Below are positions 4,238 through 56,260 of a stretch of DNA of 64,000 nucleotides, piece after piece; within the stretch, counting starts at the first letter, position 1, and each line of letters starts with the position of its first letter. The DNA is taken from assembly GCF_964204645.1 (NCBI RefSeq), contig NC_134031.1:19041910-19105909 (forward strand). Reading direction: 5' to 3'. The stretch comes from Tubulanus polymorphus. Taxonomy: Eukaryota > Animalia > Nemertea. The translations under genes were made by a program, and so were the position numbers. Under the pieces are notes generated by a model. The model ran no database searches and was not told the origin of the DNA. It worked only from the letters and a program-made list of their open reading frames with translations.

Positions 4238-4915
4238 TTGAAACCGGCCATGCACAAGTGAAACCAGCCCCGCAGTAGTGGAACTGGCATCGGACTAGTG
4301 AAACCGGCCCCGCACTAGTGGAACCGGCATCGCACTATGGTGAAACCGGCCACGCACTAGTGGAACTGGTATCGCACTAGTGAAACCGGCCCCGCACTAG
4401 TGAAACCGGCATCGCAATAGTGGAACCGGCCTTGCACTGGTGGAACTGGCCTCGCACTAGTGAAACCGGCCCCGCACTAGTGAAACTGGCCTCGCACTGG
4501 TGAAACCGGCCCCGCACTAGTGGAACCGGCATCGCACTATGGTGAAACCGGCCCCGCACTAGTGGAACTGGTATCGCACTAGTGAAACCGGCCCCGCACT
4601 AGTGAAACCGGCATCGCAATAGTGGAACCGGCCTTGCACTGGTGGAACTGGCCTCGCACTGGTGGAACCGGCCCTGCACTAGTGGAACTGGCCTCGCACT
4701 AGTGGAACCGGCCCTGCACTAGTGGAACCGGCCCCGCACTAGTGAAACCGGCCCCGCACTAGTGGAACTGGCCTCGCACTGGTGGAACCGGCCCTGCACT
4801 AGTGGAACTGGCCTCGCACTAGTGGAACCGGCCCTGCACTAGTGGAACTGGCCTCGCACTAGTGGAACTGGCCCTGCACTAGTGGAACTGGCCTCGCACT
4901 GGTGGAACCGGCCCC
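4238..4915. repeat. 20-bp minisatellite (about 33 units, consensus gcactagtggaaccggcccc) with about 202-bp higher-order duplication
   Basis: Directly visible head-to-tail units; the same variant order starts at about 4298 and again at about 4500. Confidence 0.95.
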
Positions 4916-7297
4916 TGCTTCCACCTTATTTCCTCCTTTCTCTGATCATTCCATTTTGAATTGCTGACTGTATTTGTTGATGTACATGTTCTTATCAATT
5001 TCAAGTCTTAGACAAAATAAGCCATTATGATAATATAAGTAGAACCTCTTCTTGTGTCAGAATTTTCTCGCTAGCATTTCGATCTGAACATCGATGAAAA
5101 TACGTAACACAAAGCGCTCGAATCATTTTGGCTCGAACCTGATTTTACTAAATCTGTCGACTCTGGATTTACGAAACCGAAGAGCTCTTTGTCTATGATA
5201 ATATATTTGTAAGGAGTTTTTCGTAGAAGGGTCTCATCGGTTTTGTCATCTAGTCGGACATAGCGCTTGAGGAGGTCGAAGACCTGTCTCGATAGAGACT
5301 TGCATATAAAAGAAAATCGAATGTTTTGCAAAAGAAACAAATTTCGGAGAGAAATGGCTGGCTGTTAGTGAAATACTGATCGAGAGAGAATACGAATAGT
5401 GTGCGTGTCTTATCATCACTTATATCTAGAAAAAAAGGGGTTTATTATTGAGACCGCGGCTTAGAAAGACGAGAAATTTCTATATATCGGGAAAAAAGTT
5501 TGTTGTGCGTTGATTAAAAAGACCCCTGTTGTAAACTACCCTGAGAATGATAAATAAATCCTTGAAGTTATCATTATTATTATTATTAGTGTAAATAATA
5601 TAAGCGTAGAGTTATTATTGATATGATTATTATAATTTGTTTGTGTACTTATATATTATTATAAGAAATTCTATGTAACTATGTCGACGGGCAAATGTGA
5701 TTTTTGAATATGTTATTTACGAAAGAAAACGGTAAAGTCATCTGCGCGCATTTATCAATACACTCACTTGCCAGGGCTCTACTTCTATAAGTTTGAAAAC
5801 ATTAGAATCCAGTGAAAGTTTGAAACTAGGGTCGTCGTAAGTTGAGTCAGCCCTTGCTGTTTGACGAGGCCCGGGATCAAATTTCAGAGCTAATTTTATC
5901 AAACTTAAGCCTATATATAACTTCTGGACTTAACACTGAGTGTTGCCTGCCCCTGGCAGGTGGGTATTCATTTTCCGTTTCGCTTTTTCATATTAGAATT
6001 TGGAATAGTTTCCAGCCTGACCATAACACACACACGCAGACTGACAGTATCGTCACGCTTGATTAATCCGCTTGAGTTTCTCTCAGTATCTGGTGTAAAT
6101 TACCTGTAAAAAATGAACACTAAAATTAATAATAAACATATTATCAAATAAATAAATATTATTGCGACAAGATAAGTGTTGGGCAAAGACAATATAATAA
6201 GTACATACATGTTCTATTATTGAATATTGATTATTATTATTATTATTATTATTGTTAATCAGTATCGGGTTGATTGAAGTCGAACGTATTTTGTGTCATC
6301 TCCCGAGATTCCTCCCCTCCCCACATCTTCCATCTCGTACATTATAGTCATCATATTCTTTATAAGAGAAACCTAAACTATCGATGTTCATTTCCTAAAT
6401 GATGTTGATTTTTAGCGCCCGCGATTTCATGAAATTGTCGTTGAAGGAAGTTACCGAAAATGCGGAAAAACCAAAAATTTGAGTTCTTGATTCAGTGATT
6501 TATTCATTTTCACGCGAAAGTCACCTCTCTGAATCAATTTCATATGAACAATATTCGATCGGCTCAGATTCATGGTTGTAACTATTTTCTGTCCGTGTGA
6601 AGTTGTCATAAATGATCAGATTCATTAAAGAATATGAAAAAGAAATTCATCAAAACGTTTCGAATAGAATTTGCAGATTTGATGTAAATATAAAAGACGA
6701 CGATGTTGTTTGACTAGAAGCCGCTTATCAATTGTAAATAGCCCGCAGTGTTTAAAATCTGAATGTGTGCGAGGGGTCTTTATTGATACCCCTAACAACG
6801 ACCGTTCAACTCAGCACTCGCTGTCCGATTCCATGAGTTCAGTCCGTGATGCGACCTGTTCTTAAGACAGCGCATCCTCCTCGTTATAACTCGAGGGTTC
6901 ACGGATGCAAATTAGATATTTCTGCACACGGTTCCACGGCCCAAGTTCATTTCTGATGTCAAATTTTATCTCAGAACAGTTGCATCGGGTTCATATCTTC
7001 AAGAAGTCGTGTGAAAACGATTAATCCGAAATCTCTTGGTAAATTATGTTAGTTTTGAGTTTTGTCATTGGTCAAATCCCTAAAATTCCTTATCTCGTAT
7101 TCGTGTTCAAGGTTCGAGATATTATTTCGTTGTCAAATACTATTCGTCACTTTTTGGTTTGAAGAAAAAAGACCTTGAGCTCAAATGAATATTTTAAGAT
7201 GCCCCTGGACTAAAAACAATTTGATGGAAAGAAGTGTTTTTTTTTTAATTTCTGGAAGTCTGTATAACTGTAGATGATAAATATTAATAAGACGTAG

Positions 7298-7363: not shown

Positions 7364-7962
7364 CTAGTAGAACGGGGATAGCCCAAGATTGGAGACCTGA
7401 AGAACATCGAGAGTTTTAACCTCGATGACTGATAGTCAAGACTTTGGGTCGAAATTGAAACTCGTCCAGAAATATTGAAATTCATTGCGCAAGTGTTTGT
7501 GAACCAGTCCGATTCAGTGCGGGAACCAGTCCATCCGTCGTGATAACGATAAGCTACGTTCTTGTTTTTCGATACTTCTCTAGTGTTTATATAAATATTA
7601 TTAAACATTGTAGAATTGTGTAGTTGTCCAGTAGAGAATGTGTCTCTGTACAAAGAAATAAAGGTGACATGTATGAGAAATAATAACTTAATCGCCTTTC
7701 GTTTTCATTTGTCTCGCTGGAATTAATGAATGAACTATTGGTGTTAAAGAACTTCTGGCGTCCATTCTGCAACCAGGCTTCATCCCTCACAGGTGATCGA
7801 TACCTTTTCATCAATTTGCCAATTTCCCATGGTTCAAACTCGACTCAGTTCCGCGGGCTTCACGCGATAATTTTTGATCGAACAAACTACTAACACCTGT
7901 TCAATCAGTATTTTCATGGACTTTTGCTTTTGCATATGAAACTTTCTTCCTTTGGTACAGGG

Positions 7963-8140
7963 AGTACCGGTTAGCGAAAGTGAAACTAGTCACCTCTTGG
8001 TTTTTCCGCGTTCGCCTAAAACCGATGAGGTGCGCAGTACTGAACCTCAGCGTGTAGGCCTACCATGAAATTGGTTTTCCCTATTACCGCGTCTACTTCA
8101 GTTCATTAGTACCGGGTAGCGAAAGTGAAACTGCGTCACC
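7963..8140 (+). promoter_or_regulatory. Putative ZNFX1 promoter with two copies of an IRF-E/ISRE-like element and kB-like sites
   Basis: agtaccggKtagcGAAAGTGAAActVgtcacc at 7963-7994 and 8108-8140; ggtttttcc (about 7999) and ggttttccc (about 8073) lie between them; 300-470 bp upstream of the ATG. Confidence 0.5.
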
Positions 8141-8436
8141 GTTAAGGCGCGCAGCCGCAGTACTGAGTTTATTACCGGACAGTGAATCCGGCGCGACATA
8201 TTCAATAAGGGTCCAAAAGGAAACTTCACTGACCGGCAAGGCTTGAAATACATTCATTGTTCGTAAAGAACAAGCAATGGAGAATACAGTCAAAGTGTCG
8301 AAAAATTCGGTTCATAGAATTTGATAAGATACGGGCCAAAATTCACGTATGGAGATAGGTATGACAATAAACAGCTGTCATATTCCATGTATTTTCAGAG
8401 TTAATTAATCGTTCTAGAGAAAAGTGCAATATAAAA

Positions 8437-11400
8437 ATGTCAAGAAAGAAAAATAAGGCATTATTCGAGGTTTTTGTTAGGGGATTACCACAATTAGTTA
8501 AAGAAGAACAGCTGCGAGACTTCCTTTGGAATTCAGGTGGCGTCATGGTAACTATCCTTATGATTTTTCCAAATTATTTTGGTGACTTTCCGGTGTAAAG
8601 ACATTATCTATCTAGAGTTGACACGGGTTCAAACTCATCCTCCCGCGGCAGGGATTCGAACCTGATGGCATCGAGATTGCCACAGTGAGTGTAGCGATGC
8701 CATCAGGTTCGAATCCCTGCCGTGGGAGGATGGTTCAAAGTATTCTAAGACTAACTAAGTGTTTGTTTTCTAGGCGCAAGGGATAGAGCTACCAAAAAAT
8801 CGTGAGGGTAGAAATAAAGGCTTCGGTTTTATTCAGTTCAGGGACGAGAGATCATTTGAAAAGACCATTAATCTGAAAGAGGTGGTTACATATCGATACA
8901 TGTAGCTTTATGGACATGGCCTTTGCATCCTTGGATGTCATGGGTTGTTTTTTTATATATTCAGAAATTCTTTGGCAGGCCGTTGGTTTTTGTAGAATCA
9001 AACAAAGGTAAACGTAATTCGTCATGTTACAACCGGGATTTAATCATATTTCAATTTGTTAAGAGCATTCATCAAAACATGATTTGATAGGGTGGAATTT
9101 CTCGATGAGTTTTTAGAACATTATGTTATACATGTACTTTCGCCAGTTTCATTCATTCCTGAAAATGAAATTTCTATTTTATCAGGAAAATGTTTGCGAC
9201 CAGGTGGTCGTATGATCCATAAAGATGCCTCGCAGAAAAATGAATATAGAGCTAGAAGTAAAGAACATAGAAATTTACGGTAAATAACGATGCCCTTCTT
9301 GGCAAATACGTTCATTAACATACCATTTGTTTGTACACAGTAAAACTTTGCTTAATTCGGTTCGGGATTTTTCGGATTTTGATTTAAATTGCGCTGATGC
9401 AGTTCAGTTTGCCCTTTAAATCAAAGATTACTATCTCTTTCATTCGGATCCGACTTTTCTAAATTCGGACTAAAATATCAGTTCCTTAAGAAAATTTCTG
9501 TTGAAATAATTACAATTGATTCAGATCGGTAATATGCCTGTTAGTGTAGCCACAACGATCTCCCGATCTGACACAGTGTAACTTGTATTTCACTGCAACT
9601 ATGTGCTTCCGCGCTGTCTGCAGACATGTTTCTGTCACTGCGATTTTACTTTTCACTAGAGACCGGCGCACGCGAAGAACAAATATTTCTTTTGAATATG
9701 TTTCGCAGAATAAAGAGCATGGAGCTACTAGCAGTAAAGAACGTAGACGTTTACGGTAAATATTGATTCGCTTCTTGGCGAATAGATTCGTTAACGTACG
9801 ATTTGTTCATATGTGTAAAAATGTGCATTTTTGACAGGTTGCTACGTAAGATTGACGAATTGCTGCATCCTTTGCTTGATGATATGACTACACCAGAAAT
9901 CTTCGTCTACTTGAAAGATAATCTGCCTTTATTAAAGGATCTGATGGATGACAAGTTTATTTCTTCGGAAACGTTTGAAGTTCTCATTAAAGCTATACAA
10001 TCAATTTGTGGTCAAAGCGAGGATTTGCCTATTTTACACGCTATTATCAACTCTACTATTTACAATCCAGCTGGCACAATAGATAAATATTGTAATGATT
10101 GTAAAAAATTAGGACGCCTAGATGATAGTCAAATCGGTACATTTCTGAATGTATTAAAATTGTCCAATGAAATTCTCAAGAGGCTTCCCAATCAGGCGCA
10201 TCTTCGAATTTTGTTCGTCATAAAAGGATTTGAGATCACATTTGAGAAGATAGAAATGCAGAACACAGATGTGCTAGGGGAACTTGACCAATTGCAACAA
10301 CTACATGATACCACAATTAAGAAGGTACTTCGACAAGAAGCACGCGATGAAGGGACAGCGGAGAATGTTGATATATTACTTGGGTCTATACTACCAAAAG
10401 TTGAAGACTTTCGTATCAAACCACTAATTGATGAAAATCTAGTTTATGGTTGTTACAAATCAACAACGCATTACCTTAGTACTCAATTTCAGCTGTTACG
10501 TGAGGATTTTATTCGTCCAATTCGTTCTGCAGTACAGCAGTATCTAGCCAGCTTCAGTGATAAAAAGAAAATTACTCGTCTCCAAGATGCCTTCATTTAC
10601 CATGATGTCAGGTTTATTGCGACAGATTCGTTTGAAAAGACTCGTCTGCAGTTTCACTCGAGAAATCTAAAAAGAGTTCGATGGCAGAATTGTAAACGGT
10701 TTATCTATGGTTCGCTTGTTTGTTTATCAGCCGATCGATTTGAATCGATGATTATTGCTACTGTGATGGATCGTGACCCAAAAGAGTTGGCTGAAGGATA
10801 CGTAGATGTGAAAATAATATCTGCGGTTTCATCATTGCCATTAAACTATAAAGAGAAATGTTATGTCCTCATCGAGGGACAGTCTTACTTCGAAGCATAC
10901 CGTCATAATCTAAAACGACTTCAGTCTTTGAAAAGAGATTTTGATGCAGGCGTTGAGCTTCCATTCCGTGACTATTTTGTGAGTCCAAAGAATGTTACCG
11001 TCGCACACCCTAAGTATCTGTTGATAAGGAAATTAGAGTCTACTGACAGTGTCACTGACGAACCTCTTCCTGATGATATATTTTCTGATATAAATATGCA
11101 TTGCTTAAGGTCTGATGACACAGAGATGCGATTGAAAGAATTTTTGGATTTTTCTAATTGGCCATCAGAGGAAAATTCATGTTTGGATACATCGCAATTG
11201 GAAGCGTTACACCACGCATTAACACATGAGGTTGCAATTATCCAAGGTCCTCCAGGAACTGGCAAGACCTATCTTGGTCTAAAAGTAGTAGAATTCCTTT
11301 TTGACAATGAATCGGTCTGGGAAACAAAGGAGAAAAAGACATCGCTAGGGAATCCGAAACGAACAAAACAGTTTAAAGATAAAATCATGGTTGTCTGTTA

Positions 11401-14400
11401 TACTAACCATGCGCTAGACCAGTTCCTTTCAGAGATATTGACGCTCACTCGAATTAGATTAAAAACGGTGGTTAGAATTGGGGGCAGATGCAAAGATAAA
11501 AAGTTGGAAAGAATTACACTTAAAAGTCATCGAAGAAATCCGCATTACCATAGAAGTCATAGAAGTAATGGTAGAGATCTGTTAAAAATTAATAACGGTT
11601 TGAGCGATGTGCAGGCAGAATCAAAATACCTAAAATCAATGTTGAAAAATGTGTACGTGTTTAACATTACTGTGGGTGATTTGATGCAACAAGCAGTTGC
11701 TGGGCATAGACAACAATTTCTTGTTCCACGCTGCTCCATTCAAGAGACCATTATTTATTGGGTCTTGGGCAAAGATATAATGGCTGTAGTCAAGGCAAAG
11801 ATGGATGTGCAGAACGATGGTGAAGTGATTATTGAAGATATCCCAGATGAAGATATCCCATATGACGATATCCCAGATGAAGATATCCTATATGAAGATA
11901 TCCAAGATGAAGATATCCTATATGCACATATCCCAGATGAAGATGAACCAGAGGAAGTGATGGAAGTAGACGAACGACCAGCAGCAGAATCAGTTTTAGA
12001 TGAAATTCTGCCTGAACCCGGTGAAGATGAAGCCATTGACGTCGCGGAAGAAGCACAACTGATAACCGATGAAAGGTTTATATATGATGATATACATAAT
12101 GAGATATACGATGATCAGAATATTAACAATGATATAAGCCATTATAACAAAGAGTTTTTGCTAGATAAACGAGCACTTATGAATCCGTTATGGCCAGTTA
12201 AAGATCTGCTGAAAGAGCTAAATGCGTTAGGATGCCGGATCCAAGAGCGGAAGCTTTTGAATGTCGATTACCGAAGCCGAAGGATGAACATGAACATCTG
12301 GTCTATGAATATGGAAGAGCGTCTATTGTTGTATCTGTCATGGTATAAGGCAGCTAGATCCACTTGGCAAACACGATTGGAATCGTTAGAGATAACGAGT
12401 CTGTCGTTACAGGACGAGAAAGAGAAAGCTTATTTAGAGACGGACCAGTTCATTTTACAAAGTGCAGATATCATTGCTATGACGACCACCGGTGCATCAA
12501 AATTCAGTCATCTGATAGAAGCAGTTTGTCCAAAGATCGTCATCGTAGAGGAAAGTGCTGAAGTGTTGGAAGCGCACATCGTTACGTCACTAACAGTCGG
12601 TTGTGAACATCTAATACTAATTGGTGACCATAAACAACTGCGACCAAAACCAACAGATTTCGAATTAGCTCGCGATTATAACCTCGATATATCGTTCTTC
12701 GAGAGGCTTCAGAAGAATGGCCAACCCATCAAAACTCTTCAATTACAGCATAGAATGCGTCCTGAAATCTCTCGTTTACTAGTACCACATATATATGAAT
12801 CACTGATCGATCACGATTCTGTGAAAGATTTCGATGATATAAAAGGTTTTGAGACAAATATGTTCTTCTTGAACCACAGTGAAAGTGAAAAAGCTGAAAT
12901 CGAAGGATGCAGTCATAGTAATGATTTTGAAGCAGAAATGGTAAAAGCCATGAGCAAATACATTCTAATGCAGGGTTATCGACCAGACCAGATAACCGTT
13001 CTAACGCCATACGTTGGTCAGATGTTTGCCATAAAGAACATTTTGCCACGAAGGGAATTTGAAGGTATTCGAATTACTCCCATCGACAACTTCCAAGGCG
13101 AAGAAAATGATATCATAATTTTCAGTTTTGTGCGAAGCAACAAAATGGAGAAAATAGGATTTCTGAATACGCAGAACAGAATATGTGTTGCATTATCTAG
13201 GGCTAAAAAGGGATTCTATTGCTTGGGAAACTTTAAACTCTACGCAAAGAAATGTCGAGTTTGGAGAGATATTGTTACGGATCTCGAAGAAGCTGGAAAG
13301 ATTGGAAGTCATTTGACGTTAATTTGTCAAAATCACCCAAATACAAAAACACGTGTGACGACACCAGAGGATTTTGAAAAATGTCCATTTGGTGGCTGCC
13401 AAGAAAGCTGTTCTACGATGACATGTGGCCATAAATGTCCATTTAAATGCCATAAAGGCGACCATGTGGGCAAGTATAGATGTAGAGAAAAATGTCTACG
13501 TAGTTGTGAAGCAGCTGGCCATATTTGTAAAAAACTGTGTTTTGAAGAATGCTCTCCATGCCCAGAAGATTGCACTGAAGAAATAGAATGTGGCCATATA
13601 TGTCAACGTAAATGTGGAGATGTTTGCACAACCCGCTGTGCGATGCCATGTTCCAAAAGTCTACCTTGTTCTCACCAGTGTAAGAAGTTGTGCTATGAGC
13701 CATGTGAATGTTCTGAACCATGCGAGAAGGATTTAGAATGTGGTCATAGATGTGACAGACATTGCAGTGCTCCTTGTACGCCGCGTTGTACACGTCCATG
13801 TTTAAAGAGTCTACCATGCTCTCATCAGTGTCAGGAGTTGTGCTATGAGCCGTGTGAATGTTCTGAACCATGCGAGAAGGATTTAGAATGTGGTCATAGA
13901 TGCGACAGACATTGCAGTGCTCCTTGTACACTGCGTTGTACACGTCCATGTTTAAAGAGTCTACCATGCTCTCATCAGTGTCAGGAGTTGTGCTATGAGC
14001 CGTGTGAATGTTCTGAACCATGCGAGAAGGATTTAGAATGTGGTCATAGATGCGACAGACATTGCAGTGCTCCTTGTACACTGCGTTGTACACGTCCATG
14101 TTTAAAGAGTCTACCATGCTCTCATCAGTGTCAGGAGTTGTGCCATGAGCCGTGTGAATGTTTTGAACCATGTGAGAAGGATTTAGAATGCGGTCATGAA
14201 TGTCGTAATCGTTGCAGTGTTCCTTGCACGACTCGATGCCGGATGCCATGTTCCAAGACTTTACTATGTGGACATCAGTGTACGAAATTGTGTTATGCTA
14301 CATGTGGCAAATGCTTGACATTCATTACAGTTGAACTAGAATGTAGCCATACTTTGGAAAAGGTTTGCCACAAAGAAGCAACACAGGCTGATTGTGAGAC

Positions 14401-15891
14401 GCTTATGAAAACAACATTGTCTTGTTCTCATAAGATGCGTGTAAAATGTTGCCAATTGCTCGATAAGGCATCTATCAAGTGCGAAAAAATTGTTTCAAAA
14501 GCATTACCTTGCGATCATCAATTGTGGGGGAAATGTGGTGAATCAAATGAATCCATAGATTGTCAAGTGAAAGTGAAATATGAATTGCAGTGCGGTCATA
14601 ACAGATATATAGAATGCTGGCGTTATACGAAATATGAAAATCAAACTAATGACCTTCATGGAGCCGACTTATACTGCAGTGTGATGTGTAAAAGAAAACT
14701 ATTATGTGGCCATGAAATTTTGGCTGAATGTTCACAAAATTCAACGAACCAATCACATTGCAAAAGAGAGTGCGAGGCTCGTTGCTGGCACACAAGATGC
14801 AGGAATAATTGCAATGAGCGATGCTGGGTTTGTCGTCGTCCTTGCGGTTGGGAATGCAGTCATCAAAGATGCTCTAAAACCTGCTTCGAAGTATGCGACA
14901 GGAAACCCTGCGATGAACCGTGTAATCAGAAGACTATATGCGGACATGACTGTATGGGTTACTGCGGTGAACCTTGTCCGTTGATTTGTGGCAAATGCGG
15001 AACAGCAGCTGACCCACCCAGTGAAAGGGATCGCTACGTGTCACTGTATCCTTGTGGTCACAGTTTCCTCAGGTCAGTCATTGACCAGCATATGAAAATC
15101 AAGCATCGAGGTGGAATGAAAGTTGTGAATGTCCGTTGCTGTCCGTTGTCCAAATGCAGGAAACCTATTCTGTTTTGTCCACGATATAGTCATGTAATCA
15201 AGAATTATTTCCATGCAAAATACTTCCTCCATAGGAATGTACTCAACGGTGATTGGTTATGCTGTAAAAAATGTGGTAAGACAAATTTGAACACATATAG
15301 GGCTGCATGCGCAATGATAACTTCACTATCTCGCTGAAGTATTTTCCATAGCGAGTCAATATGAATCACCATTACGATCTAGCGCTTCATCTTCATTTAT
15401 ATGTACTTCTTTGTAACGTCATAGGATCCATCGATATAACCATGGACGTATAAACTAGTTTATACATCCATGATATAACATACATTACATTCGCGTTACA
15501 GGTTACTACATGGTTTCGGATCTTCAAGATCCTAGATGTGATCGTTGTGAGGGAAGATCATTGCGTAGAAAAAGACCGAGATCAACGCAGATTAGTAAGT
15601 TGACACGATGAAAATAAGATACCGGTAATGTTGAAATAAAACTACATGTATGATTACAGAATTGTTCAGTGCCAGTGACGCGTGGCTTTAGACGTACGTT
15701 GTATTTCTACACAAATATGGAATATTTCTTTTTACACTCGTTTATATCAAGATGGCGCTTATCTTAGAAAATACGACATACATGTATTATTTCTTTCAGC
15801 ACACGGCGAATATGCGTCCCGTTACTCGGGAATTCGGAGCAGCAGTAGATACGCTCATAGGAACTCGCAGAAGAGATTTCGCCGTTGGTAA
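8437..15891 (+). CDS. ZNFX1: RRM-containing ZNFX1-family protein (RRM + SF1/Upf1-like helicase + NF-X1-type zinc fingers + RING-like + degenerate RZ-like finger). Exons 8437-8547, 8774-8881, 8965-9007, 9186-9279, 9660-9755, 9838-15275, 15502-15594, possibly 15670-15693, 15800-15891; unspliced read-through stops at 15337
   Basis: ORF 9803-15337 has QFQLLREDFIRP, Walker A QGPPGTGKT, YTNHALDQF, Walker B IVEESAEV, LIGDHKQLRP, QHRMRPEIS, DNFQGEEND, VALSRAK and many CGH/CSH zinc fingers. Upstream exons join in frame with GT-AG and matching phases. The last two exons are less certain. Confidence 0.92.
8636..8732. mobile_element. 97-bp hairpin element (38-bp arms) with 9-bp TSD, in ZNFX1 intron
   Basis: catcctcccgcggcagggattcgaacctgatggcatcg ... 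cgatgccatcaggttcgaatccctgccgtgggaggatg; flanks gttcaaact / gttcaaagt. Confidence 0.75.
11834..11946 (+). repeat. 30-bp coding repeat (EDIPDEDIxY) x about 4 inside ZNFX1 helicase insertion
   Basis: gaagatatcccagatgaagatatccYatat units. Confidence 0.85.
13646..14280 (+). repeat. 150-bp coding tandem repeat (50-aa double zinc-finger unit) x about 4
   Basis: tttaaagagtctaccatgct recurs at 13801, 13951 and 14101, with diverged copies at 13651 and 14251. Confidence 0.95.
15441..15472. mobile_element. 32-bp palindrome with 7-bp TSD (P-element-like footprint)
   Basis: atataac|catggacgtataaactagtttatacatccatg|atataac. Confidence 0.7.
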
Positions 15892-18449: not shown

Positions 18450-19520
18450 TCAAGGAATAGATGAATTATCTCTGATACAACATTGCGACGGCAGAACGCT
18501 CCAGTTATAAATATAAGAATTTAATAATTTGAATTGTTTCGCGCACAATTTATTCTTATTCACTAAATTCGAATGTAACTCGTTCAGTTGTTCGATCGTC
18601 TTTTTATGCGTGATTAAATAATCATCGTGGCAACCGCGCGATCGGTACTCGGTGTCGAAACGCGGGTCGTGCAGACGGTTTATCTCGAGCGGCGCGAGCC
18701 ACGCGCCGACCGACACGTCCTCGCTTTTATACCGTTTCAAATACGGCGCCGTAGCCGCGAGATAGTGAACCAGATCGGCGGAGATTACGTAACCTCCTCC
18801 GCGCGCGTACGGTAAATATCGGTCGCATAAAACCCAGTCTTTCTCGGCCCACTGACCGGTGTGTTTGACGCGACCGTTCCCGTAGAAGAATCCCCAGTAT
18901 AACCGCTGCGTACGTTTCCGTTTCAGCTCGTCGAAAATCGGACGCAATCGCACGTAGCTATCGTCGTCCGTTTTCAACACGTAACGATAATCCACGTTCG
19001 AGTCCAACCAGACGAACGTCTTCAGGACTTTATCCGTTAATTTATCGTAACCGTCGTGCACGTCCGACAGCAAGATCAAATCGTCGTGGACGGAATTCTC
19101 TTTTTTTAAATGCGCGACGGCCTCCGGCGCGAGCGCTTTCGTCCCGATCGCGAAGTAGACTTTCGCGTCGCCGCGGTGAGTCCGATTAACCACGGTCGAC
19201 GCCCACGTTTTACGGATCGCCATTCGCTGTTTGAAATTCGCGGGACTCGTCACGACGACCGCGACCAGGAACGCGTACGACCGACTCTCCGATCCGCGTA
19301 ACGCCGATTTCCATAAAGAGCGGCCGGACTGGTCATGGGCTCGAGCGTGGTCGACGTAATTTATCGGTTGGTTTTCGCCGATCCCGCACATCATCGTGTA
19401 AACGACTCCGCTGAGGAAGAGAAATACTGCACCGATCATGAGAGTCGTAGCGTGTCGGTTCAACTGCTGATAAATACCGACTCCCGTACGATCTCCTCGA
19501 TGATGATAGTTATTATACAT
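18450..19520 (-). CDS. B3GALT6: Beta-1,3-galactosyltransferase 6 (GT31), single coding exon
   Basis: Type II TM segment; RMAIRKTW, LKTDDDSYV, LYWGFF, WVLCDRYLPYARGGGYV, EDVSVGAWL, DPRFDTEYRSRGC, YIYNWSVLPSQCC. Confidence 0.95.
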   Translation of the reverse strand: MYNNYHHRGDRTGVGIYQQLNRHATTLMIGAVFLFLSGVVYTMMCGIGENQPINYVDHARAHDQSGRSLWKSALRGSESRSYAFLVAVVVTSPANFKQRMAIRKTWASTVVNRTHRGDAKVYFAIGTKALAPEAVAHLKKENSVHDDLILLSDVHDGYDKLTDKVLKTFVWLDSNVDYRYVLKTDDDSYVRLRPIFDELKRKRTQRLYWGFFYGNGRVKHTGQWAEKDWVLCDRYLPYARGGGYVISADLVHYLAATAPYLKRYKSEDVSVGAWLAPLEINRLHDPRFDTEYRSRGCHDDYLITHKKTIEQLNELHSNLVNKNKLCAKQFKLLNSYIYNWSVLPSQCCIRDNSSIP

Positions 19521-32106: not shown

Positions 32107-34023
32107 TCATATCAGTCGATCCCAGCATCGCGAATGTTTATATAATTTAAACGATGAATTCGGTGGCGCCGTCTGCAGTGGAGGTTCGAACGACGGGAGA
32201 CCTTCGAGAACGAAACTAGCCGTCTCCGATTGGAGATCGCAATCGAAAAATTCCATCAAATCTGGTTCTTTAGATTTCTGATCCTACAATGATAATTATT
32301 CTTATATTTCAATAAAAGATGAATCAATTCAGAGCACAGTAGTAGACTACACGCTTGATGGGTCAGCATGACGCAGATTCAAATAAAATTGTTTCATTTT
32401 GTCATCCGGGGCTAATGATATTTAGCAGTAATCGGTTCTTGGCAACTGGTAAGTGGATAGGGGTATCTCCTGAACAAAATAGATATTCCAAATAATCAAA
32501 AGCATCAAAAATCCAATTCAAAAACAGTTCCAAAAAAATACTTCCAAACAACTGTAAAGAACATAAATTCAAATATTTCTAACCTTGGTTTTTGCAGAGA
32601 TGAGTTTTGCGGCGGCTTCTGATTGTTTCGTTTTGTCGCGTTCTTTACGACGGATCAACTCCTCGGCCGGTAATTCCAGACTATTCAAACATGTGAATGA
32701 TTCAGGTTTATTCACTTTCATCGCTCCCTGTTAGAAACAGAAAATCATTTCAATTCATGTCAAAACATCTAAAAATACGAGGTTTACGATTGGTCTCTAC
32801 TGCTTTTGGTACCTATGCCGGAAAAGCAATCTGTAAACCTTGAACCAGTTGCACATTTTAGATTTAAGACCGGAACCCAGTTCCACAGATGTGTCACAGG
32901 GACGTGCAAGCCACTTTTATTTGACTTGCTTTTTGAAAACAATCAAATAATGCACTCACTTTTTCCTCAATTTCAGTTTTAATTGACAATTTCTTCATTT
33001 TTTCTTCAACACGTTTTCGCACGTCGAGATCCTGTGTTTTTAATTGTTGTATTTCTCGCGTCACTTTCAACGTCGTTTGAAATTCCGGTTTTTTCAGTAT
33101 GTTCTCGTCGACGGGGTAGAGCGATGGCTTGTCACGGTGAAGAACGTCTTCATTCGTCGTCGTCTTTCTCGATGCGCGATATTTCCCTTTTTCGCGATGA
33201 CAAAAATCATCCGATGATTTTAGCGATGTCGTCGCTGTATTCGCGATCGGTTTCAGTGGCCGTTGTTGTTTCCGCGAAACGACGCCATTTTCTACTGGTT
33301 TCGATTGTTGTTGGTCATCGATGGTGATGTCTAGGTCGCTATCGATCAGAAATTGCGGCTCTGTTGTAACGGCCGGTGAATTTTCTTTATCGTCATCAAT
33401 GACAGTGACGTCTAACTGTGATGTATCTGTCAGAGCTAACGTATCGTCCAGCGTTCCGAGGGTTAAATCATCGTCAGCGGCGATGTCAACAATAGAAATC
33501 TCGGTCATTGACGCGCCGCCGCTGCTGCTGCTTTCAGACACCGATGGAACATTAAAACGAACCTACAACAGATAAACATGTTTTTACAATACAACGCACA
33601 CATATGACACGATGGCGTATTTACAAATTCCCTGAGTTTTTTATGTTATACACACAATTGTAATTCATCCATTTAGTTTGAAATTACCTTTTGTGGTGAA
33701 AAACAGAATTACATGTTTTATGCATAATTTGTCAAATTTCCCGAGTTTTGATTTCCTGAGAATGTCCAATTTAAGGTTTAATTCTTACAAACCTGTTTAG
33801 GTGTATGGCCACTGCCACTGTCATTTCCCTTGTCCGGACTTTCTTCGATTATAGTTTTATCAGGCGTCAGACACAGATCAGGGTCCGGATGGTGCATCAT
33901 CACACCAGACAACGTGCCACCAGCCGAGACTGTACTGCTGATTATTGTCGGTACAGGTCGCTGAAAACTCGGAGCTGCTTCATCTCCGCCGAATCTCATT
34001 CCAACAATAACGTTACTGGCCAT
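32107..34023 (-). CDS. PPP1R35: Protein phosphatase 1 regulatory subunit 35-like (centriolar); 4 coding exons (about 33793-34023, 32961-33562, 32584-32727, 32107-32283)
   Basis: PDLCLTP near the N-terminus; C-terminal KPEFQTTL...VEEKM...LNSLELPAEEL...EPDLMEF...LEGLP...SFKLYKHSRCW resembles the PPP1R35 C-terminal domain. Confidence 0.75.

Positions 34024-52371: not shown

Positions 52372-56260
<3,889 letters not shown>

What the first reader, a model, noticed from the sequence alone, without database searches (positions are those of the whole stretch)
8437..9007. Hidden RRM domain fused to the N-terminus of a ZNFX1 helicase
Seen: three small exons absent from the ORF track splice in frame to give MSRKKNKALFEVFVRGLPQLVKEEQLRDFLWNSGGVM|AQGIELPKNREGRNKGFGFIQFRDERSFEKTINLKE|KFFGRPLVFVESNK, with textbook RNP2 (VFVRGL) and RNP1 (KGFGFIQF). 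Phases 0,0,1,2,2 lead through two Arg-rich exons into the 5.4-kb helicase exon. Known: canonical ZNFX1 (human, C. elegans) has no RRM. Inference: a domain-shuffled ZNFX1 paralogue with an extra ssRNA-binding module, a candidate new RNA sensor or small-RNA-pathway factor. I cannot tell whether this architecture is already catalogued.
Basis: partly seen in the sequence, partly recalled or inferred. Interest (0 to 1): 0.85.

Follow-up and report, generated by a model that had tools for sequence, protein, structure and literature searches.

The report
RRM fused to ZNFX1-like helicase
A ribbon-worm (Tubulanus polymorphus) copy of the antiviral/small-RNA helicase ZNFX1 really does carry an extra single-stranded-RNA-binding RRM domain at its front end, a lineage-restricted domain addition that public annotation already models but nobody has described.

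Summary
The three small exons (8437-8547, 8774-8881, 8965-9007) encode a canonical RRM. It scores Pfam RRM_1 45.9 bits against a cut-off of 20.7, and the predicted fold matches solved RRMs at TM 0.72-0.80. One spliced 650-nt contig from a public run joins E1-E2-E3-E4-E5 at exactly the predicted GT..AG sites.

My eight-exon join translates exactly to RefSeq XP_074655168.1 (2024 aa, Tubulanus polymorphus). [quoted passage not shown] The E5>E6 junction was not seen in reads. It rests on the RefSeq model, the reading frame and conservation in a paralogue.

A second intact paralogue 1.07 Mb away has the same RRM, basic linker and helicase layout. RRM dN/dS between the two genes is 0.35. This scan had already noted that paralogue (s1-516428).

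Three other ZNFX1-like genes of this genome and 119 ZNFX1 homologues from other animals show no such RRM. The gene is not the canonical ZNFX1 orthologue. It lies on a long branch in a nemertean-only clade and lacks a recognisable RZ finger.

Verdict: a real, lineage-restricted new variant of a known kind. Function is untested. Interest is moderate.

The parts
8167..8436 (+). 5' leader contiguous with exon 1 in the spliced RNA contig; holds four short upstream ATG reading frames and in-frame stops before the start codon
   Evidence: X2 record 9 starts at 8167; uATGs at 8277, 8349, 8361, 8387; stops upstream in frame
8437..8547 (+). Exon 1: start codon, RRM beta1 (RNP2 VFVRGL) and alpha1; 37 codons, ends in phase 0
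   Evidence: RRM_1 profile 1-25; joint 8547>8774
8636..8733 (.). Palindromic MITE-like repeat inside intron 1; not part of the protein; absent from both paralogous copies
   Evidence: more than 80 matches in the genome on both strands; the paralogues skip query 237-378; depth spike in bin 8585-8781
8774..8881 (+). Exon 2: RRM beta2, beta3 (RNP1 KGFGFIQF) and alpha2; 36 codons, ends in phase 0
   Evidence: (RRM_1 profile 27-57, E 3.5e-6)
8965..9007 (+). Exon 3: RRM beta4; 43 nt, ends in phase 1
   Evidence: (joints 8881>8965 and 9007>9186)
9186..9279 (+). Exon 4: basic (Arg/Lys-rich) linker, 94 nt, phase 1 to phase 2
   Evidence: (joint 9279>9660)
9660..9755 (+). Exon 5: second basic linker exon, 96 nt, phase 2 to phase 2; tandem duplicate of exon 4 with part of its following intron; the paralogue has only one such exon
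   Evidence: (80 nt at 83% identity, spacing 476)
9838..15275 (+). Exon 6 (5438 nt): N-terminal region, ZNFX1 domain, UPF1-like SF1 helicase core, NFX1-type zinc fingers, RING-like region
10577..10876 (+). ZNFX1 domain (Pfam PF25396)
   Evidence: 85.6 bits, residues 247-346 of the exon-6 translation
11195..13231 (+). SF1 helicase core (AAA_19/AAA_11/AAA_12) with intact Walker A, Walker B, motif III and motif VI; holds an acidic low-complexity insert at 11837-11956
13409..14998 (+). Cys/His-rich NFX1-type zinc-finger region (13 pattern matches), including three near-identical 50-residue tandem units at 13739-14185
   Evidence: the Pfam zinc-finger model itself gave no hit
14810..15205 (+). RING-like region that aligns to mammalian ZNFX1 (36% identity)
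   Evidence: E 3e-23
15502..15594 (+). Exon 7: remnant of the RZ-finger position and start of the Arg/Ser-rich tail
15800..15891 (+). Exon 8: basic tail and stop codon

Best explanation
Window 8437-15891 (+) is one eight-exon gene of the ribbon worm Tubulanus polymorphus. It encodes a 2024-aa protein made of an N-terminal canonical RRM (three exons), a basic linker of about 63 residues (two duplicated exons), and a ZNFX1-like body. The body has a ZNFX1 domain, a UPF1-type SF1 helicase with intact ATPase motifs, NFX1-type zinc fingers and a RING-like region.

Shown: the RRM exons are spliced to the linker exons in RNA, and the whole join equals a RefSeq protein. A second intact paralogue keeps the same layout, and the RRM has been under purifying selection between the two.

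Inferred: the RRM was added by exon shuffling on the branch leading to these two paralogues, inside a nemertean-specific ZNFX1-like clade that has lost a recognisable RZ (transthiolating E3) finger. The RRM, on its flexible basic tether, probably acts as an auxiliary single-stranded-RNA anchor that loads or holds the helicase on particular RNAs. In human ZNFX1, RNA is bound through the helicase core alone. Whether the pathway is antiviral sensing or small-RNA/germ-granule biology cannot be told from sequence.
For: Gene model:
- The exon join equals P0121 (XP_074655168.1) exactly.
- One RNA contig joins E1 to E5 at GT..AG.
- If intron 5 were retained, the frame would hit TAA one codon past the exon 5 end. 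Intron 5 is only 82 nt.

RRM:
- Pfam RRM_1 scores 45.9 bits, E 5e-12, over residues 12-77.
- The AlphaFold model has mean pLDDT 86 with beta-alpha-beta-beta-alpha-beta order.
- Foldseek top hits are all RRMs (RBM7, Rna15, TDP-43 RRM1, hnRNP A1) at TM 0.72-0.80.

Body:
- ZNFX1 domain, AAA_11 and AAA_12 are all hit.
- Helicase motifs I, II, III and VI are the same as, or nearly the same as, those of mammalian ZNFX1.
- The RING-like region is 36% identical to mammalian ZNFX1.

Conservation:
- The paralogue at C7:17.974 Mb has RRM exons, one basic exon and a large exon, open for 1894 codons.
- RRM dN/dS is 0.35 at dS 0.70, and RNP1 and RNP2 are kept in both genes.

Restriction:
- No RRM lies near the other three ZNFX1-like loci.
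- None is found in 119 homologues from other animals.
- Searches with residues 1-90 and 1-400 return only this gene.
- The tree places the pair in a nemertean-only clade with SH-aLRT 99.
Against: - The E5>E6 joint (9755>9838) is not covered by any listed contig. It rests on an automatic RefSeq model, the frame and the paralogue.
- Only one contig from one study shows the splicing, and the run's library type is not on record.
- RefSeq also lists isoform X2, which starts at the last codon of exon 1 and lacks beta1/alpha1 of the RRM. The share of each isoform is unknown.
- Absence of the fusion elsewhere rests on searches of limited reach: word-based candidates, only the top 120 or 150 rows listed, and multi-RRM proteins crowding the ranking. 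No other palaeonemertean genome could be searched.
- RNA binding by the RRM and any role in immunity or small-RNA pathways are untested.
Confidence: 0.85

Rival explanations
1. The RRM exons belong to a separate small gene, or to a read-through or chimeric transcript, and the helicase is translated on its own.
For: The 9755>9838 joint was not seen in the laid contigs. Contigs of X3 and X4 cover introns 4 and 5 unspliced (records 16, 17, 24), though these may be DNA or pre-mRNA.
Against: - Exons 1-5 have no stop and no terminal exon. Retaining intron 4 or 5 gives TAA at once.
- Intron 5 is 82 nt and the phase fits the 5.4-kb exon.
- The large exon has no ATG near its start. The ORF listing opens its frame at a TTG at 9803, inside intron 5, and the exon itself begins in mid-codon.
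- The RefSeq model joins them.
- The paralogue keeps the same phase-compatible layout across dS 0.7.
Confidence: 0.04
2. The RRM is transcribed but is a decaying or neutral appendage. The working product is the isoform without an intact RRM (X2), and the domain adds nothing to function.
For: - RefSeq isoform X2 starts at residue 37 and lacks RNP2.
- The RRM is only 64% identical between the paralogues, against 89% for the large exon.
- A third copy of the 5' module is clearly dead.
Against: - dN/dS is 0.35 over the RRM. The lower identity reflects a higher dS (0.70), not relaxed constraint.
- RNP1 and RNP2 aromatic and basic residues are intact in both genes.
- The fold prediction is confident.
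- Both genes keep all three exons open and spliceable.
Confidence: 0.08
3. The RRM works not as an RNA anchor but as a protein-interaction or autoinhibitory module. It would dock on the helicase or on a partner, as some RRM-like domains do.
For: Nothing direct. The domain sits on a long flexible basic tether next to a poorly conserved N-terminal region that has no homologues outside this gene.
Against: The RNA-contacting RNP1 and RNP2 consensus positions are canonical. That is typical of RNA-binding RRMs, not of protein-binding variants (established knowledge of the family).
Confidence: 0.07

Closest known systems
[quoted passage not shown]
   Same: It shares the ZNFX1 domain and the UPF1-like SF1 helicase with the same motifs I, II, III and VI. 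It also shares the Cys/His-rich NFX1-type fingers and a RING-like region, 36% identical over 142 residues. Human ZNFX1 binds RNA through its helicase domain and is an E3 ligase with an RZ catalytic cysteine and a RING-like module (bioRxiv 10.1101/2025.09.05.674436).
   Different: This protein has an N-terminal RRM and a basic linker that none of 119 homologues show. It has no Pfam RZ finger, whereas the mammalian control scores 79 bits. It sits in a nemertean-only clade on a long branch, apart from the clade that holds vertebrate ZNFX1. Its first 400 residues have no detectable relatives.
C. elegans ZNFX-1 and S. pombe Hrr1 (small-RNA pathway ZNFX1 homologues)
   Same: Same helicase and zinc-finger family. 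They act on RNA in small-RNA inheritance and heterochromatin pathways (my own knowledge, not tested here).
   Different: To my knowledge they have no RRM.
NFX1 (transcription factor with NFX1-type fingers and a C-terminal R3H domain)
   Same: It combines NFX1-type zinc fingers with a small single-stranded nucleic-acid-binding module (my own knowledge).
   Different: NFX1 has no helicase. Its added module is R3H at the C-terminus, not an RRM at the N-terminus.
DbpA/YxiN-type DEAD-box helicases with an appended RRM-fold RNA-binding domain
   Same: This is an analogy of mechanism. An RRM-fold module tethered to a helicase core anchors it to a specific RNA while the core works nearby (my own knowledge).
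   Different: Those are bacterial SF2 helicases with a C-terminal module, so they are unrelated in descent. Here the helicase is a eukaryotic SF1 with an N-terminal canonical RRM.

Membership tests
RRM (Pfam PF00076 RRM_1) | Sequence passes the curated profile threshold | tested here: met
   45.9 bits against a cut-off of 20.7, E 5e-12, residues 12-77, profile 1-65/70. Exon by exon: E1 matches profile 1-25 and E2 matches 27-57.
RRM (Pfam PF00076 RRM_1) | RNP2 hexamer on beta1 and RNP1 octamer on beta3, with aromatic residues | tested here: met
   VFVRGL and KGFGFIQF in the window gene; VFVRGL and KGFGFIRF in the paralogue.
RRM (Pfam PF00076 RRM_1) | beta1-alpha1-beta2-beta3-alpha2-beta4 fold | tested here: met
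   Predicted only. AlphaFold mean pLDDT is 86.1 with elements E10-15, H23-29, E36-42, E54-59, H62-69, E81-84. Foldseek hits solved RRMs at TM 0.72-0.80.
RRM (Pfam PF00076 RRM_1) | Binds single-stranded RNA | not testable with these tools
   Needs a binding assay.
ZNFX1 family | ZNFX1 domain (PF25396) followed by a UPF1-like SF1 helicase (AAA_11/AAA_12) with intact ATPase motifs | tested here: met
   PF25396 85.6 bits, AAA_11 93.4 bits, AAA_12 140.6 bits. GPPGTGKT, VIVEESAE, GDHKQLRP and VALSRAK are present.
ZNFX1 family | NFX1-type zinc fingers C-terminal to the helicase | tested here: inconclusive
   13 matches to a Cys/His pattern that I wrote from memory of the published NFX1-type consensus. 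No Pfam zinc-finger model hit at E <= 1.
ZNFX1 family | RING-like region near the C-terminus | tested here: met
   Sequence similarity only: 36% identity over 142 residues to a mammalian ZNFX1, E 3e-23.
ZNFX1 family | RZ-type zinc finger (PF20173) with the catalytic cysteine | tested here: not met
   No hit on P0121:1280-2024 at E <= 1. The mammalian control P0095 scores 79.4 bits. Only a shortened, weakly alignable remnant lies at the same position. The two nemertean relatives tested (P0006, P0004) also lack it.
ZNFX1 family | Orthology to canonical ZNFX1 | tested here: not met
   The quick ML tree puts it in a nemertean-only clade (SH-aLRT 99) on a branch of 0.98. Two other Tubulanus loci group with mollusc ZNFX1-like genes. 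The long-branch warning applies.

The most novel reading that the evidence does not exclude
The RRM gives this helicase a sequence- or structure-selective hold on particular single-stranded RNAs. Together with loss of the RZ ubiquitin-ligase finger, this would mean the two paralogues have become a distinct kind of RNA-guided or RNA-sensing helicase in ribbon worms, for example a germline small-RNA factor or an antiviral sensor with a target range of its own. They would then be more than one further ZNFX1 copy.
Probability: 0.2. Interest if true: 0.6.

Novelty: new variant of a known kind. Interest (0 to 1): 0.38.

Why it matters
ZNFX1 is a conserved innate-immune and small-RNA helicase. How it picks its RNA targets is still being worked out, and human ZNFX1 binds RNA through its helicase core. 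A natural variant that bolts a canonical RRM onto the same core, while dropping the RZ ligase finger, is a ready-made experiment on how target choice and effector output can be rewired in this family.

It is also a clean case of domain gain by exon shuffling. The added unit is three exons with compatible phases, fixed in two paralogues.

The reach is limited. It is two genes in one little-studied phylum, the domains are all well known, and no functional data exist.

Tried and rejected
**Searches for the fusion elsewhere**
- The search for homologous proteins with P0121 region 1-90 returned only this gene among 17 candidates.
- The same search with region 1-400 returned only this gene among 4398 candidates.
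- The exhaustive HMMER search with residues 1-90 gave 3676 RRM proteins. The listed top 150 are mostly multi-RRM proteins about 30-36% identical, and none other than self is a ZNFX1. This ranking favours proteins with many RRMs, so a single-RRM fusion elsewhere could be hidden.
- No donor gene for the RRM was found in the genome at E <= 0.01.

**Reads**
- No listed run is on record as RNA.
- Only X2 gave a spliced contig, and the E5>E6 joint stayed uncovered.

**Domains and literature**
- The Pfam zinc-finger and RZ models gave nothing on the C-terminal 745 residues.
- Paper searches for ZNFX1 with 'RNA recognition motif' or 'domain architecture' found no description of such a fusion.

**The joined model**
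- Exons were searched one by one by reference.
- After I used the stored RefSeq protein P0121, which equals the join.
This was only to check the frame and to run a local tblastn against the paralogous locus.

**Ideas considered and rejected**
- Separate RRM gene or read-through chimera: rejected.
- Chance RRM-like ORFs: rejected.
- A RanBP2-like reading of the C-terminal Cys cluster: dropped, because no profile supports it.

Full report
**Joined spliced model.** I sent no typed joined sequence to any search tool. The exons were searched one by one by reference. From then on I used the stored RefSeq protein P0121, which equals the join.

**1. The observation**

Reading window 8000-10200 confirms every coordinate.
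- E1 is 8437-8547 and begins with ATG.
- E2 is 8774-8881.
- E3 is 8965-9007.
- E4 is 9186-9279.
- E5 is 9660-9755.
- E6 begins at 9838.

All introns are GT..AG. In-frame stops lie upstream of the ATG at 8437.

Searched separately by reference, E1 hits Pfam RRM_1 at profile positions 1-25 (E 0.0086). E2 hits positions 27-57 (E 3.5e-6, above the gathering score on its own). Two neighbouring small ORFs that match consecutive halves of one profile, in compatible phases, are not a chance pattern.

**2. Transcript evidence**

The look-up of sequencing runs found four runs of one study that hold the stretch, and none has a library type on record. Laid on 7600-13500, run X2 gave one 650-nt contig (record 9, depth 39). 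It lies on 8167-8547, 8774-8881, 8965-9007, 9186-9279 and the first 25 nt or so of E5. All four joints have GT..AG ends (tables 5 and 8).

So X2 holds cDNA, and exons 1 to 5 are spliced as predicted in a single molecule. Run X1 covers the introns and looks like DNA.

The last joint, 9755>9838, is not covered by any listed contig. X3 and X4 have unspliced pieces over introns 4 and 5, which may be DNA or pre-mRNA.

**3. The gene is already in RefSeq**

[quoted passage not shown] It lies on a contig of 21,623,276 bases, the same length as the contig holding the window. Its cluster also holds isoform X1, XP_074655168.1 (P0121, 2024 aa).

A join of eight exons translates exactly to P0121. These are the six above, with E6 ending at 15275, plus 15502-15594 and 15800-15891. 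Isoform X2 starts at the ATG that is the last codon of exon 1, so it lacks the first 36 residues of the RRM.

The organism is a palaeonemertean ribbon worm.

**4. The domain is a real RRM**

- On P0121:1-160, RRM_1 scores 45.9 bits (cut-off 20.7), E 5e-12, over residues 12-77.
- An AlphaFold model of residues 1-90 was built on an alignment of 41 RRMs. It has mean pLDDT 86 and the order beta-alpha-beta-beta-alpha-beta.
- Foldseek against the PDB returns only RRMs at the top (RBM7, Rna15, TDP-43 RRM1, hnRNP A1, RBM39) at TM 0.72-0.80.
- RNP2 (VFVRGL) and RNP1 (KGFGFIQF) are canonical.

**5. The rest of the protein**

- Exon 6 carries the ZNFX1 domain (PF25396), AAA_11 and AAA_12.
- Helicase motifs I, II, III and VI match those of mammalian ZNFX1.
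- Thirteen NFX1-type Cys/His pattern matches follow, including three near-identical 50-residue units.
- A RING-like stretch is 36% identical to a mammalian ZNFX1 (E 3e-23).
- No RZ finger is detected at E <= 1. The same scan finds it at 79 bits in the mammalian control and fails in two other nemertean relatives. At the RZ position there is only a shortened remnant.
- Human ZNFX1 uses the RZ cysteine for transthiolation and binds RNA through the helicase core (bioRxiv 10.1101/2025.09.05.674436).
- The linker (E4 plus E5, 63 residues) has 19 Arg/Lys against 7 Asp/Glu.
- E4 and E5, with the starts of their following introns, are tandem duplicates: 83% over 80 nt, spacing 476.

**6. Paralogues**

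The RRM exons have two further copies on the same chromosome, about 1.07 Mb away.

Copy B (L009 8434 onward) has three RRM exons, one basic exon and a large exon, open for 1894 codons up to the same donor. So the architecture is kept in a second intact gene. An earlier first-reader note (s1-516428) had flagged this gene. I confirmed its RRM, its helicase and an (RG)11 run in a downstream exon.

Copy A (L009 about 4538-5325) is 90-92% identical in DNA to the window's 5' module but is dead. It has a TAA in exon 1, a lost acceptor, a 1-nt deletion in exon 2, and ends inside intron 3.

Between the window gene and copy B, the RRM has dN/dS 0.35 at dS 0.70. The large exon has dS 0.13. The RRM has therefore been under purifying selection. 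The two parts of the genes have different histories, with gene conversion or a mosaic origin of the large exon as possible causes. I did not resolve this.

**7. How restricted is the fusion?**

- The genome has at least five ZNFX1-like loci, each with one very large exon.
- A local RRM profile finds RRM pieces only at the window gene and at the copy A/B locus. It finds none within about 6-7 kb upstream or 4-5 kb downstream of the large ORFs of the other three loci.
- None of the other 119 listed ZNFX1 homologues, from cnidarians to mammals and including Lineus longissimus and another Tubulanus paralogue, has a match to this RRM. None lists PF00076.
- Searches restricted to residues 1-90 and 1-400 return only this gene.
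- The exhaustive profile-free search finds only generic RRM proteins about 30-36% identical.
- A quick ML tree of helicase cores puts the two RRM-bearing genes together on a long branch. That branch sits inside a nemertean-only clade with Tubulanus P0006 and two Lineus proteins (SH-aLRT 99). The two other Tubulanus loci group with mollusc ZNFX1-like genes. The program's long-branch warning applies.

The most economical reading is one gain of the RRM module on the branch leading to the two paralogues.

**8. Mechanism**

Shown: one transcript unit, a canonical RRM, intact helicase motifs, conservation in two genes, and no RZ finger.

Inferred: the RRM, held on a flexible basic tether, anchors or recruits the SF1 helicase to single-stranded RNA. 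This adds affinity or selectivity that canonical ZNFX1 lacks. The effector side may be reduced to the RING-like part.

The pathway, antiviral or small-RNA, is open. ZNFX1 families are also expanded in other spiralians, for example 11 copies in an earthworm (PMC7253469).

**9. Verdict**

The sequence is already in RefSeq under a generic name, and I found no paper describing an RRM-ZNFX1 fusion. It is a new variant of a known kind and of moderate interest. The main open points are the direct E5>E6 evidence, the balance between isoforms, the distribution in other nemerteans, and function.

Noticed in passing
window 8636-8733: Palindromic MITE-like element of about 98 nt in intron 1, with more than 80 matches across the genome on both strands. 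Both paralogous copies lack it, so it inserted after the duplication. Its arms resemble a tRNA T-arm (ggttcgaatccc).
   Followed up: partly
L009:4538-5325 (G000:C7:17970537-17971324): Dead partial copy of the window gene's 5' module (exons 1-3 and part of intron 3), 90-92% identical in DNA. It has a TAA in exon 1, a lost exon-2 acceptor and a 1-nt deletion. It lies 3.1 kb upstream of the intact paralogue's own RRM exons.
   Followed up: yes
window 8196-15609 against L009+L010: Mosaic divergence between the two RRM-ZNFX1 genes. The working 5' modules differ by about 27% in DNA (dS 0.70), but the large exon differs by only about 10% (dS 0.13), the same as the dead copy A. This suggests gene conversion or a recombinant origin. 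Unresolved.
   Followed up: partly
window 9186-9331 and 9660-9807: Exon 4 and exon 5, with the first 50 nt or so of their following introns, are a tandem duplication (83% over 80 nt). Exon 5 is symmetrical (96 nt, phase 2 to phase 2) and could be skipped in frame. The paralogue has one such exon.
   Followed up: yes
window 13739-14185: Three near-identical tandem units of 50 residues (150 nt) within the zinc-finger region, a recent internal expansion of finger pairs.
   Followed up: partly
window 11837-11956: Acidic low-complexity insert (a D/E-I-P-type repeat of 40 residues) inside the helicase core, between Walker A and Walker B.
   Followed up: no
L010 about 5018 (G000:C7 about 17981017): The paralogue has an (RG)11 run in a small downstream exon, an RGG-like tail. 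The window gene's tail is Arg/Ser-rich instead.
   Followed up: partly
window 8277-8436: Four short upstream ATG reading frames lie in the 270-nt leader covered by the RNA contig. They may affect translation, or the leader may be spliced differently in other transcripts.
   Followed up: no
window 18450-19520 (-), 52372-53022 (-), 32894-33541 (-): Neighbouring ORFs: a galactosyltransferase (Galactosyl_T, E 4.7e-30), an RsmB/F-type methyltransferase exon (E 1.3e-8), and a weak PPP1R35 C-terminal match below the cut-off.
   Followed up: partly
window 8545-8547: RefSeq isoform X2 (XP_074655169.1) begins at the last codon of exon 1 and so encodes a truncated RRM without RNP2. It may be a real alternative start or an annotation by-product.
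   Followed up: no
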